Part shown: positions 21,404-26,642 of the stretch, in pieces | Position numbering within the stretch: position 1 is the first letter of the stretch | Layout of the letters: each line of letters begins with the position of its first letter | IMG/VR virus record: IMGVR_UViG_3300046804_003469 | Span: 1-64,000 of that record | Reading direction: 5' to 3' (one strand) | Length of the DNA stretch: 64,000 nt | Notes under the pieces: model-generated | Told to the model about the DNA's origin: nothing | The model's input: only the letters and a program-made list of their open reading frames with translations | Databases searched by the model: none | Made by a program: the position numbers and the translations under genes

Positions 21404-22369
21404 ATGAAACTTAAAAATTTTATTGCTATTGGTCTGGTTACTGCTCCTGTTGCTGCACTTGCTGGATCTTCTCTGAATGGTGCTGGTGCCACCTTCCCAT
21501 CACCAATTTATCAACGTTGGTTCCAAGATTATGCACGAACTTCTGGGAGTAGGGTTAATTATCAGTCCGTTGGTTCTGGTGCTGGTGTTCGCCAATTCCT
21601 TGCGGGAACAGTTGATTTCGCAGCAAGCGATGAACCAATCAAACCCGCAGAGGCAGCAAAAGTGAAACGTGGTGTCGTTCAAATTCCTATGGTAGGTGGA
21701 ACGATTGCTATTGCCTATAATAAAACTGGATGTACTCTGAAACTCTCTCAGAAACAAACTGTGGATATTTTTGCTGGACGTATTAAGGATTGGAAACAAC
21801 TTCCTAACTGTGGTAATGGTACTATTCGTGTGGTACATCGTGCTGATGCTTCTGGTACTACCTTTGCTTTCACTAACTCTCTTGAATCATTTGGTGGTTG
21901 GACTTATGGTGTTGCTAAATCCGTAAACTGGCCTACTGGTATTGCTTCTAAGGGTAACGAAGGTGTTGCTGGTACGATCAAAAACACTCCTGGTTCTATC
22001 GGTTATGTAAATACTGGATTTGTTCGTGCCAACAAACTCCAAGCAGCAGCAATTCAAAACAAGGCAGGTAAGTTCATTCTTCCTTCTGCTTCCACTGGTT
22101 CTGCTGCTCTGAATAGTATTACTCTAGATACAAACCTTGCAGGTGAAAATCCTAATCCTTCTGGTGTAAATGCATATCCCATTTCTACTCTGACATGGAT
22201 TCTTGCCTATAAGACTGGTAATGGTTCTAAGGCAGGTGATATTCGCTCTGCTCTAAACTATGCTCTAAGTTCTAAGGCACAGATGATTGCTGATGACCTT
22301 GGATATGTTCCTCTTGCTGGAAGTGTTCTAAACAAAGCACGTCTTGCAGTTGGTCGTATCGGTCAGTAA
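21404..22369 (+). CDS. pstS: Phosphate ABC transporter periplasmic binding protein
   Basis: GAGATFP, YQSVGSGAG, DFAASD, RADASGTT, KGNEGV, YPISTLTW. Confidence 0.95.
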   Translation: MKLKNFIAIGLVTAPVAALAGSSLNGAGATFPSPIYQRWFQDYARTSGSRVNYQSVGSGAGVRQFLAGTVDFAASDEPIKPAEAAKVKRGVVQIPMVGGTIAIAYNKTGCTLKLSQKQTVDIFAGRIKDWKQLPNCGNGTIRVVHRADASGTTFAFTNSLESFGGWTYGVAKSVNWPTGIASKGNEGVAGTIKNTPGSIGYVNTGFVRANKLQAAAIQNKAGKFILPSASTGSAALNSITLDTNLAGENPNPSGVNAYPISTLTWILAYKTGNGSKAGDIRSALNYALSSKAQMIADDLGYVPLAGSVLNKARLAVGRIGQ

Positions 22370-22399
22370 ATTCCGACAAAATAAGTATCAGATAATACC

Positions 22400-22437
22400 A
22401 AGGGGTGCTTGACACCTCTTTATTTTTCCTATATAAT
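22400..22437 (+). promoter_or_regulatory. Terminator hairpin overlapping a consensus sigma70 promoter for hli
   Basis: AAGGGGTG-cttga-CACCTCTT plus T-rich tail; TTGACA 22409, 17 nt, TATAAT 22432. Confidence 0.8.
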
Positions 22438-22464
22438 TGTGTAACAATTCGTAATAAAACGAAA

Positions 22465-22674
22465 ATGACTGTAACAAAAAATGAATTTGGACAAATGAAT
22501 ATGTGGGCAAAAGAACCTTCGATGTATATGACGAAGGAAGATCTTGAACGTTATGGTATTGAACCTTATGCAGAAAAAGCGGAGAAAATGAATGGACGTT
22601 GGGCAATGCTCGGCATTATTGCTGGTGCTATTTCTTATGCTCTCACTGGTAAACTTTTCTTCGGAGTCTTCTGA
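22465..22674 (+). CDS. hli: High-light inducible protein with N-terminal extension
   Basis: AEKMNGRWAMLG chlorophyll-binding helix. Confidence 0.9.
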   Translation: MTVTKNEFGQMNMWAKEPSMYMTKEDLERYGIEPYAEKAEKMNGRWAMLGIIAGAISYALTGKLFFGVF

Positions 22675-22679
22675 TTGAT

Positions 22680-22844
22680 ATGAGTGCTGGAATGCTCGGG
22701 CAATTTAATCTTGCCCTTCAAGAACTTGTAGAATCAGGTGCCTGGGATAAAGATGATGAACTTAAAGTTTGCATCGCAGGCACCTTACCTAAAGATAAAT
22801 TTATTGTCATTCAAAACATTACTAAAAGAGGAGAAAAAAAATGA
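22680..22844 (+). CDS. Hypothetical 54-aa protein between the two hli genes (not in ORF track)
   Basis: MSAGMLGQFNLALQELVESGAWDKDDELKVCIAG..; ATGA overlap with next gene. Confidence 0.65.
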   Translation: MSAGMLGQFNLALQELVESGAWDKDDELKVCIAGTLPKDKFIVIQNITKRGEKK

Positions 22845-22960
22845 AAAATCTTTTTACTGAGAAAGCAGAACGTATTAATGGTTGGGCTGCTATGATTGGA
22901 ATTATTGCTGGTATGGGTTCTTATCTTGCCACTGGTCAACTGATTCCTGGTGTATTCTGA
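22841..22960 (+). CDS. hli: High-light inducible protein, 39 aa (not in ORF track)
   Basis: MKNLFTEKAERINGWAAMIGIIAGMGSYLATGQLIPGVF; GAGGAG RBS. Confidence 0.9.
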   Translation: MKNLFTEKAERINGWAAMIGIIAGMGSYLATGQLIPGVF

Positions 22961-22971
22961 TGGAGGTTACT

Positions 22972-23496
22972 ATGCGTAAAGAAGGTTATCAAATTGCTCA
23001 AGTTGAATTTGTATTTCGTGAATCTGGCGAGTTTGTAACTCGTACAACTGAAGATCTTTTCAATGGAAAACGTGTTGTCATTTTTAGCCTGCCTGGTGCT
23101 TTCACTCCTACTTGCAGTGCCTATCAGTTACCTGGATTCGAAGAGAAATACAACGACTTTCTTGGTCTCGGCATCGACGATATTTATTGCGTCTCTGTTA
23201 ATGACGGGTTTGTGATGAACGCCTGGGCACAAGATCAAAACATTAAAAACGTAAAACTTATTCCCGATGGAAATGCTTATTTCACCCGTTCGATGGGTAT
23301 GCTCGTTCGTAAATCAAACCTTGGGTTCGGTGAGCGCAGTTGGCGTTACGCTGCTGTGGTGAATAACGGAATCATCGAAAAACTTTTTGTTGAGGATGGA
23401 CAACGTGATAATGCAGATTCTGATCCATATGAGGTAACAACTCCAGAAAATGTTTTAAATTATCTAACACTTTCACAAAAACCTGTTGCAGTTTAA
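22972..23496 (+). CDS. Type II (Prx5-like) peroxiredoxin
   Basis: LPGAFTPTCS, SVNDGFVMNAW, DGNAYFT, RSWRYA; GGAGG RBS before ATG 22972. Confidence 0.9.
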   Translation: MRKEGYQIAQVEFVFRESGEFVTRTTEDLFNGKRVVIFSLPGAFTPTCSAYQLPGFEEKYNDFLGLGIDDIYCVSVNDGFVMNAWAQDQNIKNVKLIPDGNAYFTRSMGMLVRKSNLGFGERSWRYAAVVNNGIIEKLFVEDGQRDNADSDPYEVTTPENVLNYLTLSQKPVAV

Positions 23497-23502
23497 ATTT
23501 AT

Positions 23503-23529
23503 TCCCCCTTCTACAAGGGGGATTTTTTT
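23503..23529 (+). terminator. Rho-independent terminator
   Basis: TCCCCCTT-ctac-AAGGGGGA plus T7. Confidence 0.85.
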
Positions 23530-23536
23530 ATAAATA
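23529..23536 (+). promoter_or_regulatory. T4-type late promoter TATAAATA
   Basis: Exact consensus directly after the terminator and before the hydrolase genes. Confidence 0.8.
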
Positions 23537-23561: not shown

Positions 23562-24233
23562 ATGACATTAGATCTTCATAACTTTTTTAAGTATTATGAT
23601 GATAGTAATTCAAACCATGTAGCAGCAGTTCAATGGTTAGAGGATAATCTTCCTGCTGAATATATGGATGACTCTGAAACTGAATGGGTTAGAATTTTTA
23701 GAACTAAACCTCCAACTCCAGCAGTATTAGATGTTCCCTACTTTAATCAAGTAGATAACTATAGAGATGCACATAGAACTTGTAACTCTTCATCGTGTGC
23801 TATGTGTCTTGCTTTCCTGAAACCAGGAAGCATCAAAGGTGATGATGAATATATTAAAAAAGTGTTCGCAATTGGAGATACTACTGACCATGCTGTACAG
23901 ACAAAAGTTCTGGCAGGTTATGGTGTTAAGTCACACTTTAGTTACAATCTTTCTTTTGCTGATATTGATAAGAGTCTTGATGCTGGGAAACCTGTCGTTA
24001 TTGGCATCTTACACAGGGGTCCTCTTTCTGCTCCTACTGGCGGTCACATGGTTGTAGTGATTGGTAAGACACCAGATGGTAAAGGTTATTACTGTAATGA
24101 TCCATATGGTTCATGTAATGATAATTACACTGGCCCAGTAACAAACGGTAAGAAAACCGTTTATACCAAAGCAATGCTCAAGTATCGTTGGTGCCCAGGT
24201 GGCAATGACGGTTGGGGTAGAATTTTCGACTGA
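23562..24233 (+). CDS. C39-like cysteine peptidase with an N-terminal domain shared with the next gene; probable cell-wall hydrolase
   Basis: VPYFNQ, CNSSSCAM, GHMVVVIG, NDPYG (Cys-His-Asp). Confidence 0.8.
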   Translation: MTLDLHNFFKYYDDSNSNHVAAVQWLEDNLPAEYMDDSETEWVRIFRTKPPTPAVLDVPYFNQVDNYRDAHRTCNSSSCAMCLAFLKPGSIKGDDEYIKKVFAIGDTTDHAVQTKVLAGYGVKSHFSYNLSFADIDKSLDAGKPVVIGILHRGPLSAPTGGHMVVVIGKTPDGKGYYCNDPYGSCNDNYTGPVTNGKKTVYTKAMLKYRWCPGGNDGWGRIFD

Positions 24234-24246
24234 TAGGAGAACAATC

Positions 24247-24915
24247 ATGGCAAAGGTAGATTTACACAACTTTTTTAAATATTATGATGACAAAAATCCT
24301 AATCATGTAAAGGCGGTTCAATGGATGGAAGATCATCTTCCCATCAAATACTTAGAAGATAACTCTGAATGGGCAGAAATTTTTAGAGGAAAAAAGACTA
24401 GTGCTGCACCAGCCCCTGCCGCTGCTGCAGCTCCAGTCGTAGGTGGTGATGATGTACCTATGATGGGCATCAAATTAATCAAAGAGTTTGAAGGATGTAG
24501 ATTAAATGCTTATCCTGATCCTCTTTCTGGTGGACTTCCTATTACAATTGGGTGGGGTTGTACTCGTAAGAAGGATGGATCTCCATTCCATCTTGGAGAT
24601 ACAATCACTCAAGCAGAAGCAGACGAACTTTTAATTGAAGAATGCAAACATAATTTCCTTCCATCACTCCGTAAAATTCCACATTGGAATGAAATGAGTG
24701 ATGGTAAAAGAGGGGCCCTATTATCTTTTGCATATAATTTGGGTGCTGGATTTTACGGTGGTGATAATTTTAATACTATTACTAAACGTTTGAAAAATAA
24801 AGAGTGGGATTTAGTTCCCGATGCATTGTATCTCTACAGAAATCCTGGTTCAAATGTAGAAGCAGGACTTGCACGTAGAAGAAAGGCTGAAGGTGAATCT
24901 TGGAAAAAAGGTTAA
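24247..24915 (+). CDS. GH24 lysozyme/endolysin with shared N-terminal domain and Ala/Pro linker
   Basis: IKEFEG..AYPD..TIGWG, SFAYNLG, GLARRR.AE; AGGAG RBS before ATG 24247. Confidence 0.9.
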   Translation: MAKVDLHNFFKYYDDKNPNHVKAVQWMEDHLPIKYLEDNSEWAEIFRGKKTSAAPAPAAAAAPVVGGDDVPMMGIKLIKEFEGCRLNAYPDPLSGGLPITIGWGCTRKKDGSPFHLGDTITQAEADELLIEECKHNFLPSLRKIPHWNEMSDGKRGALLSFAYNLGAGFYGGDNFNTITKRLKNKEWDLVPDALYLYRNPGSNVEAGLARRRKAEGESWKKG

Positions 24916-24933
24916 ACTTTCACACAAACTAAA

Positions 24934-25272
24934 ATGGAAAACGACAAAAAGGCAAAATGTATGAGTACTGTTATTCGTGTCGCTATTCTTAGTTGGTCTG
25001 CTGCTCTTCTTACAGCATCATATGCGGGTCTTCTTTCAAAGATGGATCCTACCTTTATTGCAACTGTTTTCACTGCTTCCGCTGCTACCTTTGGTATTAA
25101 CACAATGAAAAAAGGTGGAGATGATGATGAGAAAAAAGTAGAACCACGTAGAGAAGAAGTAGTTGTAGAAGCACCTCCAGAACCACCAGCTCCAGAAACT
25201 CTTGAAGCAAGAGTAGAAGCATTGGAGGAAAAGGTTGAAGAGGGTGAAGGATTTGTTCAACCTCGTACATGA
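24934..25272 (+). CDS. Two-TM membrane protein with charged tail; holin candidate
   Basis: Two hydrophobic segments, acidic Pro-rich tail, directly after endolysin. Confidence 0.5.
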   Translation: MENDKKAKCMSTVIRVAILSWSAALLTASYAGLLSKMDPTFIATVFTASAATFGINTMKKGGDDDEKKVEPRREEVVVEAPPEPPAPETLEARVEALEEKVEEGEGFVQPRT

Positions 25273-25276
25273 TAAA

Positions 25277-25489
25277 ATGAAGTATATAACTTTAACATTT
25301 TCTGTGATAAGTTTGGGCATCAGTACCGCTATAGGTATTGGTGCCTATGTAACTTATCAGAAAGCACAAAAGATTCTTGATAATCCAGAAGCATTTGTTG
25401 GTGCCGTTGTAGAAAAGCAAGTTAACAAAGCATTTGAAAAATTACCAGTTCCAAAACTAAATACCAAAGAGTTCAAATTACCTTTCTAA
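25277..25489 (+). CDS. Single-TM small protein
   Basis: MKYITLTFSVISLGISTAIGIGAYV followed by a helical region. Confidence 0.6.
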   Translation: MKYITLTFSVISLGISTAIGIGAYVTYQKAQKILDNPEAFVGAVVEKQVNKAFEKLPVPKLNTKEFKLPF

Positions 25490-25902
25490 TGGCAGATAAA
25501 GATCCTTACATTTACAGAATCCGTGAGATTCATAAAGTAGTTGATGGAGATACTATTGATGCTGACATTGATTTGGGTTTTGATATTTCTCTCACTAAGC
25601 GAATTCGCCTTGCTGGGGTTGATACTCCTGAGTCACGCACTGCAGATGCGAATGAAAAGAAATATGGACTTGAAGCGAAAGAATGGTTGAAGCACCGTTG
25701 TGAAGGTGCTAAGGACATTCTGATCAAGACTGAACTTCCAGACTCCACAGAGAAGTATGGTCGTATTATTGGTCATTTATTCATTAATGGCGAAACAACA
25801 TCCCTCAACAATCAAATGATTACTGAGGGATATGCTTGGAACTATGACGGTGGAACTAAAGTTAAGAATTTTGCCGAATTAGATTCTAAGAGGAAAAAAT
25901 GA
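25489..25902 (+). CDS. Thermonuclease (SNase)-like nuclease
   Basis: VVDGDT, RIRLAGVDTPE, KYGR. Confidence 0.85.
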   Translation: MADKDPYIYRIREIHKVVDGDTIDADIDLGFDISLTKRIRLAGVDTPESRTADANEKKYGLEAKEWLKHRCEGAKDILIKTELPDSTEKYGRIIGHLFINGETTSLNNQMITEGYAWNYDGGTKVKNFAELDSKRKK

Positions 25903-26642
25903 AAAAATTTTTTTCAATTTTATCTGTTGCATTATTATCCTTACCAGTCAGTGCTGAATCATTAACTAAAACACAACCAACTGTAAAACCATATAGTTTA
26001 TCAGCAATGGGTTGTATGATTCTTTTGGAATGTACAGAAGGAGTTGAAAAACTTACATCAGATTCTGAATTTTTGAAAGGATCTGAATTTGATCCTTTTA
26101 GAGAAGAAATTAAAAGTATTCTTACAGGTCTCGATAAACTTAATGTTCCCGTTTATGTTGCCCCAGAAAGATATTTCACACCAAGAACCGTAGGATTATA
26201 TAAACCAGAATATAATCGATTTTTTGTGAATGAAATTCTTCTTAAAGATCCAAGAGAATTCTTGGGAACAATGAGACATGAGGGATGGCATACAGTTCAA
26301 GATTGTATGGGTGGTGGATTGAATACTGCATTTATGGCACAAGTACATCAAGATTCCGAAATACCTTCTTGGGTAATGAAGATGACTAAACTTTCTTATG
26401 AAAGTATGGGCCAAGGTCGTGCTGTGCCTTGGGAAGCAGATGCTAACTGGGCAGAAGAACAATCCAATACAACTGCACAAAAACTTGAAATGTGTGCAAA
26501 AGGTCCATTGTGGGAACAGATTCGTCCAACACCAATGACTATGGAATGGTTAATTGGGTGTGGATGGATGAAACCACAAGAAGGTTTATATCCATATAAT
26601 CCAAATAAAAAATCAGAATATTGTGTAGAGGGAAAATACTAA
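25899..26642 (+). CDS. Exported zincin-like metallopeptidase
   Basis: Signal peptide (VSA/E), HEGWH motif, downstream WEADA glutamate. Confidence 0.7.
   Translation: MKKFFSILSVALLSLPVSAESLTKTQPTVKPYSLSAMGCMILLECTEGVEKLTSDSEFLKGSEFDPFREEIKSILTGLDKLNVPVYVAPERYFTPRTVGLYKPEYNRFFVNEILLKDPREFLGTMRHEGWHTVQDCMGGGLNTAFMAQVHQDSEIPSWVMKMTKLSYESMGQGRAVPWEADANWAEEQSNTTAQKLEMCAKGPLWEQIRPTPMTMEWLIGCGWMKPQEGLYPYNPNKKSEYCVEGKY

What the first reader, a model, noticed from the sequence alone, without database searches (positions are those of the whole stretch)
23562..25489. Two different cell-wall hydrolases share a duplicated, uncharacterised ~47-aa N-terminal domain
Seen: LDLHNFFKYYDDSNSNHVAAVQWLEDNLP..EWVRIFR on the C39 peptidase and VDLHNFFKYYDDKNPNHVKAVQWMEDHLP..EWAEIFR on the GH24 lysozyme. 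Each is followed by a Pro/Ala linker. Both follow a perfect late promoter and precede a two-TM and a one-TM protein. Inference: a modular lysis system in which the shared domain oligomerises, targets the envelope or acts as an export tag, possibly with the free frameshift product as a third subunit (compare multimeric endolysins such as PlyC or CTP1L).
Basis: partly seen in the sequence, partly recalled or inferred. Interest (0 to 1): 0.75.

Follow-up and report, generated by a model that had tools for sequence, protein, structure and literature searches.

The report
Cyanophage endolysin module with frameshift
Two neighbouring cell-wall-degrading enzymes of a freshwater cyanobacterial virus carry the same small, undescribed N-terminal module, and one of the genes has a conserved ribosomal frameshift signal that should release that module as a free 51-residue protein, which would be a new way to build a multi-part lysis enzyme.

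Summary
Genes 23562-24233 (papain-like C39 peptidase) and 24247-24915 (GH24 lysozyme) start with homologous 48-residue modules (31/47 identical, E 3e-20). The module matches nothing in Pfam, NCBIfam or the PDB, and no solved fold. It is a cyanophage-restricted domain family found almost only in phage peptidoglycan hydrolases. It is fused to five catalytic families (C39, GH24, GH19, M15, GH73), at N-terminal, internal or tandem positions. It occurs in T4-like, T7-like and other Synechococcus phages.

Immediately after the module, the GH24 gene carries a dnaX-like -1 frameshift cassette:
- the heptamer A_AAA_AAG (24390-24396);
- a -1 stop one codon later (24399-24401);
- a stem-loop starting 6 nt downstream (24403-24431).

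Across 53-56 distinct orthologues the heptamer codons show zero synonymous variation (gene mean 0.36). The -1 stop is kept by different codon pairs, and the stem shows compensatory changes. The predicted product is a free 51-residue module.

Best reading: a targeting (probably cell-wall-binding) and self-associating endolysin module. It would be a two-polypeptide endolysin made by frameshifting rather than by an internal start. Binding, oligomerisation and the frameshift itself are untested. The export-tag idea is not supported.

The parts
23503..23522 (+). Terminator-like hairpin followed by a T-run, at the end of the upstream peroxiredoxin gene
   Evidence: 8-bp stem, 5 G-C pairs, then TTTTTTT
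23529..23536 (+). TATAAATA, a T4-type late-promoter-like motif serving both lysin genes
   Evidence: 3 matches in the window against 8.9 expected by chance; ATAAATA lies 28-33 nt upstream of the start in 46 of 78 related loci, and none lies between the two genes where they are adjacent; only the 3 loci with a 1,264-nt gap have one
23562..24233 (+). Gene for N-module + papain-like C39-type cysteine peptidase (223 aa), a putative endolysin peptidase
   Evidence: Pfam PF13529 3.3e-15. Q63, C74, H162 and D180 are conserved. AlphaFold2 pLDDT 91.9; Z 15.7 to 3erv and 14.6 to the pseudomurein endoisopeptidase PeiR; all structural matches start at residue 49 or later
23562..23705 (+). N-module copy 1 (residues 1-48)
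24247..24915 (+). Gene for N-module + Ala/Pro linker + GH24 lysozyme (222 aa), a P22 gp19 / lambda R-type endolysin
   Evidence: Pfam PF00959 7.2e-22; E82, D91 and T100 present; tblastn to lysozyme R-type endolysins
24247..24390 (+). N-module copy 2 (residues 1-48)
24390..24396 (+). Slippery heptamer A_AAA_AAG in the frame needed for a -1 shift (codons G48 GGA, K49 AAA, K50 AAG)
   Evidence: In frame in 74 of 79 orthologues. Synonymous diversity is 0.00 at all three codons in 56 distinct sequences, against a gene mean of 0.36. It is the lowest of 193 three-codon windows
24399..24401 (+). TAG stop in the -1 frame, one codon after the shift site; predicted product is residues 1-50 plus Asp (51 aa)
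   Evidence: Stop after one codon in 67 of 74 orthologues (47 of 53 distinct sequences). Different codon pairs keep it: GGT AAT, ACT AGT, TCT AAT, TCT AGT, CAT AGT. Ser52 is always AGT
24403..24431 (+). RNA stem-loop starting 6 nt after the heptamer (outer arms 24403-24408 / 24426-24431, inner pairs 24410-24413 / 24421-24424)
   Evidence: MFE -16.1 kcal/mol, z -2.0. 49 of 53 distinct orthologues have a perfect 6-bp partner at offset +6, against 28.1 +/- 3.1 under synonymous resampling of the 3' side. 84/84 cells paired, 2 pairs with compensatory change, covariation score 0.223 against 0.070, 0/500 shuffles
24934..25272 (+). DUF6450 small membrane protein with an acidic C-terminal tail; candidate holin
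   Evidence: PF20048 1.9e-18; hydropathy; follows the lysin pair in most related loci that reach that far; found in 428 phage records, all cyanophages; lies between the tail fibre and small terminase genes in podovirus NATL1A-7
25277..25489 (+). 70-residue protein with one N-terminal transmembrane segment; role unknown (second lysis-cassette membrane protein?)
   Evidence: no family match

Best explanation
Two co-transcribed late genes encode the phage's endolysins: a papain-like C39-type peptidase and a GH24 muramidase. Each carries at its N-terminus a copy of a small helical module of about 45 residues. The module belongs to an undescribed, cyanophage-restricted domain family that behaves like the non-catalytic targeting domain of modular endolysins. 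It most likely binds a component of the picocyanobacterial cell wall. The GH24 gene also makes a second product. At A_AAA_AAG (24390-24396) a fraction of ribosomes slips to the -1 frame, helped by a stem-loop 6 nt downstream. These ribosomes stop one codon later and release the module alone as a 51-residue protein. By analogy with two-polypeptide endolysins (CTP1L, Lys170), the free module would associate with the module on the full-length enzyme or enzymes and so tune binding or activity. Neither enzyme has an export signal, so they would reach the wall through a holin, for which the DUF6450 protein downstream is the candidate. Shown here: homology of the modules, their distribution and partners, intact catalytic residues, and nucleotide-level selection on the heptamer, the -1 stop and the stem. 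Inferred: that frameshifting occurs, that the module binds the wall, that it self-associates, and that DUF6450 is a holin.
For: Module and homology:
- 66% identity, E 3e-20.
- The duplication is old. Paralogues are about 65% identical and orthologues 88-91%, with fixed paralogue-specific residues.
- The module is as conserved as the catalytic domains (0.885-0.906 against 0.893-0.932), while the GH24 linker varies in sequence (0.66) and in length (21-35 residues).
- The AlphaFold2 model is confident: pLDDT 89.5, helices at 17-29 and 41-47.

Mobile endolysin module:
- An exhaustive profile search of 1.84 billion representative proteins gave only 103 clusters.
- Architectures found: N-C39, N-GH24, N-N-GH24, N-C39-GH24, GH24-N-C39, N-C39-GH19, N-GH19, N-M15, GH24-N-M15, N-GH73-C39 and GH73-N-C39.
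- A divergent branch in P60-type phages is homologous (hhalign probability 95.8%, E 7.9e-9) and has the same partners.

Host-linked and phage-only distribution:
- All 55 + 13 phage records with the module are Synechococcus phages of unrelated morphotypes.
- Only 2 loci, both phage-like, were found in 185,579 species genomes.

Frameshift cassette: as listed under parts. A natural control lineage keeps the residues G-K-K but encodes them as GGT AAG AAA, so the amino acids do not force the heptamer.

Other points:
- Free non-catalytic domains made from the same gene are known in endolysins (PMC4777826, PMC7098653, PMC9430671, PMC12203907).
- Neither enzyme has a hydrophobic segment.
- The cassette order C39 - GH24 - DUF6450 - one-TM protein is conserved.
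- The S-SZBM1 virion proteome names only one enzyme, a cytidylyltransferase, which argues against a virion role (PMC9146016).
Against: - There is no direct evidence for wall binding, self-association or frameshifting.
- The module has no detectable relative among known wall-binding domains or solved folds. The only hint is TM 0.50 to a cyanobacterial PG_binding_1 protein.
- It appears absent from host genomes so far as one pattern scan of 185,579 species genomes and the profile search show, unlike many wall-binding domains shared with autolysins.
- Its charge is not conserved (pI 4.3-9.8).
- In-frame A_AAA_AAG is not rare in this AT-rich genome: 11 occur in 71 ORFs, 3 of them with an immediate -1 stop.
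- There is no conserved upstream Shine-Dalgarno-like stimulator.
- The folding energy of the linker region is no lower than for synonymous resampling (z -0.57), because Ala/Pro codons are G+C-rich anyway.
- The orthologues are related, so the compensatory changes may be few events.
- The L105 lineage lacks the cassette and the S-SRM01 GH24 lacks the module, so neither is indispensable.
- Divergent stand-alone homologues lie outside lysis cassettes.
Confidence: 0.5

Rival explanations
1. The module is an ordinary monomeric cell-wall-binding domain. The short frameshift product, if made at all, is a by-product or a competitor/regulator that occupies binding sites, not a subunit. There is no multimeric enzyme.
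For: The domain shows the promiscuous, host-linked distribution and the EAD-linker-module layout of classical modular endolysins. Most phages have one copy and no cassette.
Against: It does not explain why the heptamer, the immediate -1 stop and the stem are under nucleotide-level selection across the clade. A free binding domain that merely competes would seem counter-productive unless it has a regulatory role.
Confidence: 0.2
2. The module is a protein-protein docking or regulatory domain that does not bind the wall. It might bind a host factor, a chaperone or a phage lysis regulator, or hold the enzymes inactive in the cytoplasm until the holin fires. The free module would titrate that partner.
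For: There is no similarity to any carbohydrate- or peptidoglycan-binding family. Stand-alone homologues lie in non-lysis neighbourhoods. The module appears absent from host autolysins. The linker to C39 is short and conserved, and pTM is 0.77 for the two-domain model.
Against: Its partners are exclusively peptidoglycan hydrolases. It occurs in unrelated phage lineages with different lysis genes, so a phage-encoded partner is unlikely. Tandem and central positions are typical of binding repeats.
Confidence: 0.15
3. The conserved nucleotides at 24388-24431 serve something other than recoding, such as an RNA stability or processing element, or codon context. The gene then makes one protein.
For: No experimental data exist. 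The heptamer is common by chance in this genome. The linker RNA folds no better than synonymous controls. There is no Rfam match.
Against: Three independent features coincide with the geometry of a -1 frameshift site: the correct frame of the heptamer, a -1 stop kept by five different codon pairs, and a covarying stem exactly 6 nt downstream. All sit exactly at the domain boundary.
Confidence: 0.1
4. The enzymes are virion-associated entry lysins, and the module docks them to the particle.
For: Late-promoter control would also fit structural genes.
Against: In podoviruses the module-bearing enzyme sits at the endolysin position between the tail fibre and small terminase genes. The S-SZBM1 virion proteome names no peptidase. 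The GH24 domain is of the lambda R / P22 gp19 endolysin type. A candidate holin follows.
Confidence: 0.04
5. The module is an export or secretion tag.
For: It is N-terminal in most proteins.
Against: It is hydrophilic, with no signal or signal-anchor segment. It is internal in GH24-N-C39 and GH73-N-C39 and tandem in N-N-GH24.
Confidence: 0.02

Closest known systems
Two-polypeptide endolysins encoded in one gene (CTP1L, CD27L, Lys170, LysIME-EF1, phi2638A)
   Same: One gene would give a full-length enzyme plus a free copy of its non-catalytic domain. In the known cases the free domain assembles with the full-length protein (PMC4777826, PMC7098653, PMC9430671, PMC12203907).
   Different: The known cases use an in-frame internal start to release a C-terminal binding domain, in phages of Gram-positive bacteria. 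Here the domain is N-terminal, the release would be by -1 ribosomal frameshifting with immediate termination, and the host is a cyanobacterium. Assembly is untested. None of the retrieved endolysin papers mentions ribosomal frameshifting.
Escherichia coli dnaX -1 programmed frameshift (tau/gamma)
   Same: From my own knowledge of dnaX: the same heptamer A_AAA_AAG, a stop one codon after the shift so that a truncated protein results, and a stimulatory stem-loop about 6 nt downstream. The window has all three.
   Different: There is no conserved upstream Shine-Dalgarno-like stimulator, the gene is unrelated, there is no Rfam hit, and efficiency is unknown.
PlyC (streptococcal phage C1 multimeric lysin)
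   Same: A lytic enzyme built from a catalytic chain plus separately made binding subunits.
   Different: PlyC uses two genes and an octameric binding ring. No sequence or fold similarity was found here.
Modular endolysins of Gram-negative-infecting phages with an N-terminal PG_binding_1 domain (KZ144, EL188 type)
   Same: An N-terminal non-catalytic module, a flexible linker and a C-terminal catalytic domain.
   Different: There is no PF01471 match even at E <= 10, no PDB fold match, and only TM 0.50 to one PG_binding_1 model.
C39-like cysteine peptidase domains in endolysins (mycobacteriophage LysA domain N5) and the pseudomurein endoisopeptidase PeiR
   Same: A papain-like C39-type fold in phage or prophage wall-lytic enzymes (PMC3314691; Z 14.6 to PeiR).
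   Different: The bond cleaved by the cyanophage domain is unknown. Sequence identity is only 14-22%.

Membership tests
Peptidase_C39_2 (PF13529), papain-like cysteine peptidases | Profile match above the gathering score | tested here: met
   57.3 bits against a cut-off of 24, residues 56-182
Peptidase_C39_2 (PF13529), papain-like cysteine peptidases | Catalytic Cys/His/Asp and oxyanion Gln conserved; papain-like fold | tested here: met
   Q63, C74, H162 and D180 are invariant or nearly so in 22 homologues. Z 15.7 to 3erv
Peptidase_C39_2 (PF13529), papain-like cysteine peptidases | Cleavage of a peptidoglycan peptide bond (needed to call it an endolysin peptidase) | not testable with these tools
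   Only contextual: fused in one chain with GH24, GH19 or GH73
GH24 Phage_lysozyme (PF00959) | Profile match and the catalytic Glu-Asp-Thr triad | tested here: met
   78.5 bits against a cut-off of 22.3. E82, D91 and T100 present. 33-41% identity to P22/lambda R-type endolysins
Modular endolysin with a cell-wall-binding domain | A separate non-catalytic domain joined to the catalytic domain by a variable linker and shuffled among catalytic domains | tested here: met
   Five catalytic partners; N-terminal, central and tandem positions. Linker variable in sequence and length
Modular endolysin with a cell-wall-binding domain | The domain binds the host cell wall | not testable with these tools
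   Only indirect: all 68 phage records with the domain are Synechococcus phages of unrelated types
PG_binding_1 (PF01471) and other known wall-binding families | Sequence profile or fold match | tested here: not met
   No Pfam hit at E <= 10, none in NCBIfam, none in PDB sequences. Foldseek against the PDB gave 0 hits. Best Z was 2.8. TM 0.50 to one PG_binding_1 model
Two-polypeptide (multimeric) endolysins | A second product consisting of the non-catalytic domain alone, made from the same gene | tested here: inconclusive
   A conserved -1 frameshift cassette predicts a 51-residue free module. No protein-level data
Two-polypeptide (multimeric) endolysins | The free domain assembles with the full-length enzyme | not testable with these tools
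dnaX-type -1 programmed ribosomal frameshift | X_XXY_YYZ heptamer in the zero frame, conserved at synonymous sites | tested here: met
   GGA AAA AAG: synonymous diversity 0.00 at all three codons against a gene mean of 0.36. Lowest of 193 windows
dnaX-type -1 programmed ribosomal frameshift | Downstream stimulatory structure at 5-8 nt with covariation | tested here: met
   Stem at +6. 49/53 against 28.1 +/- 3.1 expected. 84/84 cells paired, 2 pairs with compensatory change, 0/500 shuffles
dnaX-type -1 programmed ribosomal frameshift | Upstream Shine-Dalgarno-like stimulator | tested here: not met
   GGAG lies 11 nt upstream only in some orthologues and is absent in the window
dnaX-type -1 programmed ribosomal frameshift | Frameshifted protein detected | not testable with these tools
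   Runs holding the region are DNA metagenomes kept as contigs
Signal-anchor-release or secreted endolysins | N-terminal hydrophobic segment | tested here: not met
   Maximum 19-residue hydropathy is 0.85 and 1.02; no window exceeds 1.4
Holin (for the DUF6450 protein at 24934-25272) | Small protein with transmembrane segment(s) and a charged C-terminus, encoded next to the endolysin | tested here: met
   It sits at the T7 holin position in NATL1A-7
Holin (for the DUF6450 protein at 24934-25272) | Forms membrane lesions that release the endolysin | not testable with these tools
   No paper mentions DUF6450. The family is absent from five other module-bearing phages (positive control)

The most novel reading that the evidence does not exclude
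Cyanophages of this clade use a programmed -1 ribosomal frameshift to release a free N-terminal targeting domain, and this domain co-assembles with one or both module-bearing hydrolases (peptidase and muramidase) into a hetero-multimeric endolysin. It would be the first two-polypeptide endolysin made by recoding rather than by an internal start, the first for a Gram-negative-type host, and it would rest on a new wall-binding fold specific to picocyanobacteria.
Probability: 0.3. Interest if true: 0.85.

Novelty: new variant of a known kind. Interest (0 to 1): 0.7.

Why it matters
Lysis by cyanophages drives carbon and nutrient release from picocyanobacteria, yet their lysis machinery is almost uncharacterised. 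This work has three consequences.
1. It delimits a domain family present in the endolysins of T4-like, T7-like and other Synechococcus phages. The family is missing from the domain databases. It is a ready candidate for a picocyanobacteria-specific wall-binding tag, useful for labelling, capture and engineered lysins against blooms.
2. It predicts a new route to two-polypeptide endolysins. When the non-catalytic domain is N-terminal, an internal start cannot release it, and a dnaX-like frameshift with immediate termination would do the same job.
3. It gives a concrete, cheap experimental test, and adds a candidate to the short list of conserved bacterial-type -1 frameshift sites outside tail-chaperone, transposase and dnaX genes.

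Tried and rejected
- Known domain? Pfam at E <= 10, PHROGs, NCBIfam and PDB sequence profiles gave no family for the module. PHROGs only contains it as an undelimited part of phrog_3617 and phrog_10051.
- Known fold? Foldseek against the PDB gave 0 hits. A wide VIA-align search gave a best Z of 2.8 (HMG boxes, noise). AFDB, Atlas and BFVD returned only family members and weak hits.
- The language-model search gave only lysozyme-context hits.
- An embedded +1 ORF in the C39 gene (23839-24057) seemed possible because several metagenome proteins are fused to it. A synonymous-codon shuffle gives P = 0.29, and the fusions shift at different places, so they are indel errors.
- Concerted evolution of the two copies is rejected: paralogues are 65% identical and orthologues 88-91%.
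- Linker RNA more stable than expected? Not against synonymous resampling (z -0.57). The evidence for the stem rests on position and covariation instead.
- Internal ribosome-binding site as the cause of the conserved purine run? The Arg47 codon varies (AGA, CGC, AGG, CGG), so no Shine-Dalgarno-like sequence is conserved there.
- DUF6450 was not found in S-PM2, ACG-2014f, S-SZBM1, S-SRM01 or S-CREM1 (control).
- A link between the window's phrog_591 protein and the 'gp165' genes next to DUF6450 in other phages was not found.
- A word-based homologue search with the P60 N-terminus found only 2 proteins. The first genome contigs attempt failed for lack of a conserved stretch.
- Read-level evidence was not pursued. 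The runs holding the region are DNA metagenomes kept as contigs, and one RNA run holds 5% of the sampled words.
Full report
WHAT IS THERE

The window belongs to a 215-kb, apparently complete virus genome. It has the hallmarks of a T4-like cyanophage. PstS, high-light-inducible protein genes and a peroxiredoxin gene lie just upstream. The nearest database relatives are freshwater Synechococcus phages of the Kyanoviridae. The sequencing runs that hold the region are mostly freshwater metagenomes.

Genes 23562-24233 and 24247-24915 lie 13 nt apart on the + strand. One TATAAATA sits at 23529-23536, directly after a terminator-like hairpin at 23503-23522. The first protein is a Peptidase_C39_2 member and the second a GH24 Phage_lysozyme. 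Their first ~48 residues align at 31/47 identities (E 3e-20) and nothing else aligns. The genome has exactly these two copies.

THE ENZYMES

The GH24 domain has the catalytic Glu82, Asp91 and Thr100. It is 33-41% identical to lambda R / P22 gp19-type endolysins.

The C39 domain keeps Gln63, Cys74, His162 and Asp180 in all or nearly all of 22 homologues. Its AlphaFold2 model has pLDDT 91.9 and pTM 0.77. The model superposes on the Bacillus anthracis C39-like peptidase 3erv at Z 15.7 and on the pseudomurein endoisopeptidase PeiR at Z 14.6. Every structural match starts at residue 49 or later. A C39-like peptidase domain is already listed among mycobacteriophage endolysin domains (PMC3314691).

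That this peptidase acts on peptidoglycan is inferred, not shown. The inference rests on natural single-chain fusions with GH24, GH19 and GH73 domains. Neither enzyme has a hydrophobic segment, so both would depend on a holin.

THE MODULE

The module gives no hit in Pfam at E <= 10, in NCBIfam or in PDB sequences. PHROGs contains it only as an undelimited part of two endolysin families.

Its AlphaFold2 model from a 32-sequence alignment is confident (pLDDT 89.5). It shows a short N-terminal turn, helices at residues 17-29 and 41-47, and a bridge between residues 2 and 36. Fold searches found no credible match:
- Foldseek against the PDB gave nothing.
- A wide search gave a best Z of 2.8.
- The predicted-structure libraries returned only family members.
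- One hit reached TM 0.50, to a cyanobacterial PG_binding_1 protein.

An exhaustive profile search of 1.84 billion representative proteins found only 103 clusters, two of which are ankyrin false positives. The longer members have these architectures: N-C39, N-GH24, N-N-GH24, N-C39-GH24, GH24-N-C39, C39-x-N-GH24, N-C39-GH19, N-GH19, N-M15, GH24-N-M15, N-GH73-C39 and GH73-N-C39.

A divergent branch heads the endolysins of P60-type podoviruses and of S-CRES1 and S-EIV1. It is homologous (hhalign probability 95.8%, E 7.9e-9) and has the same partners.

In a collection of 50,697 phage records, all 55 + 13 records that carry the module are Synechococcus phages. Among 185,579 species genomes, one pattern scan found two loci, both on phage-like MAG contigs. 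IMG/VR holds at least 569 loci.

This is the signature of the non-catalytic targeting domain of modular endolysins. The module is restricted to the phages of one host group, crosses unrelated phage lineages, and is shuffled among catalytic domains at N-terminal, central or tandem positions. That is what I take it to be. Binding itself is untested, and the module is not found in host proteins.

THE PAIR

In 74 related loci the order N-C39 then N-GH24 is conserved. DUF6450, the one-TM gene and an SNase gene usually follow.

The two copies are an old duplication without concerted evolution. Paralogues are about 65% identical and orthologues 88-91%, with fixed differences. The module is as conserved as the catalytic domains, while the GH24 linker varies in sequence and length.

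Other phages carry a single copy:
- ACG-2014f has one chain, N-C39-GH24.
- S-CREM1 has GH24-N-C39.
- S-SRM01 has N-C39 followed by a GH24 without the module, 59% identical from residue 70.

A heterodimer of the two enzymes therefore cannot be the module's general role.

THE FRAMESHIFT CASSETTE

Codons 48-50 of the GH24 gene read GGA AAA AAG. This places A_AAA_AAG (24390-24396) in the frame required for a -1 shift. In the -1 frame the next codons are GAC TAG (stop at 24399-24401). The product would be residues 1-50 plus Asp, which is the module alone.

Conservation of the heptamer:
- It is in frame in 74 of 79 orthologues.
- In 56 distinct sequences the three codons have zero synonymous diversity (GGA 54/54, AAA 56/56, AAG 55/56).
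- Flanking codons range from 0.23 to 0.63 and the gene mean is 0.36.
- Only 2 of 20 Lys codons and 2 of 21 Gly codons in the gene fall below 0.05.
- The window G-K-K is the lowest of 193 three-codon windows. The C39 gene has nothing comparable at its domain boundary.

Conservation of the -1 stop: it follows after one codon in 67 of 74 orthologues. The two amino acids there vary (Gly-Asn, Thr-Ser, Ser-Asn, Ser-Ser, His-Ser), but the stop is kept. Ser52 is always AGT out of six possible codons.

The stem-loop:
- It begins 6 nt after the heptamer (24403-24431; -16.1 kcal/mol, z -2.0).
- 49 of 53 distinct orthologues have a perfect 6-bp partner for the arm at that offset, despite loop lengths of 8-32 nt. 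Other offsets give 2-13, apart from the neighbouring offsets 4-5 and offsets 21-24, which fall in the 3' part of the repeat-rich linker.
- Synonymous resampling of the 3' side gives 28.1 +/- 3.1, with a maximum of 36 in 300 trials.
- On 20 same-length orthologues, all 84 cells pair and two pairs show compensatory change (U-A to G-C, and C-G to U-A). The covariation score is 0.223 against 0.070 +/- 0.026 (0 of 500 shuffles), and slid partners give no compensatory changes.

A divergent lineage (L105) keeps the residues Gly-Lys-Lys but encodes them as GGT AAG AAA. The amino acids therefore do not dictate the heptamer.

Caveats:
- In-frame A_AAA_AAG is not rare here: 11 occur in 71 ORFs.
- There is no conserved upstream Shine-Dalgarno-like element.
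- The linker RNA is no more stable than synonymous controls.
- The orthologues are related, so the compensatory changes may be few events.
- There is no protein-level evidence.

From my own knowledge, the layout matches E. coli dnaX: the same heptamer, a stop one codon after the shift, and a stem-loop about 6 nt downstream. Rfam gives no hit.

HOW IT MOST LIKELY WORKS

Late in infection one transcript gives N-C39, N-GH24 and, through slippage, the free module. A holin lets them reach the wall. The DUF6450 protein is the candidate: it is a small membrane protein found only in cyanophages, and in podovirus NATL1A-7 it sits where T7 has its holin.

The module targets the enzymes to the wall. The free module most plausibly associates with the enzyme-borne modules, as free binding domains do in CTP1L-type endolysins (PMC4777826, PMC7098653, PMC9430671, PMC12203907). 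It would tune avidity or activity. The deliberate production of a free copy is the main argument for self-association.

I give about 0.7 to the cassette being functional. I give about 0.45 each to wall binding and to self-association, and 0.5 to the combined picture in outline. Rivals are listed separately. The export-tag idea is rejected and the virion-lysin idea is unlikely.

COMPARISON AND NOVELTY

Modular endolysins, C39-like and GH24 catalytic domains, two-polypeptide endolysins and dnaX-type frameshifting are all known. Three things are new:
- the domain family itself;
- its restriction to cyanophage lysins;
- the use of a -1 frameshift to free an N-terminal domain, for which I found no precedent in the endolysin papers retrieved.

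I file it as a new variant of a known kind.

Noticed in passing
L093:3752-3931 (also L094, L095, L096); proteins P0114, P0128, P0138, P0148, P0162, P0165: Divergent stand-alone homologues of the module, 57-61 residues long, occur in marine metagenome contigs. They lie beside an integrase-like gene, an HNH gene and small ORFs, not beside lysis genes. Reciprocal tblastn of P0128 hits the N-modules of C39 endolysins (E 1e-5). This shows the fold can work as a free protein.
   Followed up: partly
L097:33352-34029 (P60 gp37); L100, L101, L102, L103, L104: The endolysins of P60-type cyanopodoviruses, S-CRES1 and S-EIV1 start with, or contain, a divergent version of the module. Its partners are GH19, C39 and GH73-C39. 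It is homologous by profile comparison (probability 95.8%).
   Followed up: yes
L105:790-1533 and L106:991-1734 (P0052): This lineage of N-GH24 keeps Gly-Lys-Lys but without the slippery heptamer (GGT AAG AAA). It has a Cys-Pro-His-Cys-Gly-Lys insertion in the linker. DUF6450 and then a Lipase_3 gene follow.
   Followed up: partly
window 24442-24465: GGT GGT GAT GAT .. ATG ATG lies at the end of the linker. This is a Shine-Dalgarno-like run about 10 nt before in-frame ATGs, with low synonymous diversity at codon 66 (0.01). It could be an internal start giving a module-less GH24 isoform. The evidence is weak.
   Followed up: partly
window 36160 and 53030 (+ strand): Two more in-frame A_AAA_AAG heptamers with a -1 stop after one codon occur in other ORFs of the window. 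Conservation was not examined.
   Followed up: no
window 23839-24057 (+1 frame inside the C39 gene); P0016, P0018, P0025, P0026, P0030: A hydrophobic open +1 frame of 72-78 codons lies inside the C39 gene. Several metagenome protein predictions run into it at different points. A synonymous-codon shuffle shows the open frame is expected (P = 0.29), so the fusions look like indel errors.
   Followed up: yes
L009:3172-3530; L011 and L012, intergenic region between the two lysin genes: Some relatives carry a small gene with a signal-peptide-like N-terminus inserted between the C39 and GH24 genes. It may be another lysis-cassette component.
   Followed up: no
window 25489-25902 and 25899-26642: An SNase-type nuclease gene is followed by a gene for a secreted-looking 247-residue protein (phrog_591, signal-peptide-like start, His-Glu-Gly-Trp-His motif). 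The SNase gene follows the lysis cassette in many relatives; the phrog_591 gene appears there in only a few. No relation to the 'gp165' genes that neighbour DUF6450 in other cyanophages was found.
   Followed up: partly
window, whole: TATAAATA is under-represented: 3 matches against 8.9 expected from shuffles. One of the three sits 25 nt upstream of the lysin operon.
   Followed up: partly
window 21404-23496: A host-like auxiliary gene block (PstS, two short high-light-inducible protein genes, peroxiredoxin) lies immediately upstream of the lysis cassette and has higher G+C (0.38-0.43) than the rest of the window.
   Followed up: no
P0135, P0157: Ankyrin-repeat proteins score as weak false positives of the module profile, because an ankyrin helix resembles the module's second helix.
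   Followed up: yes
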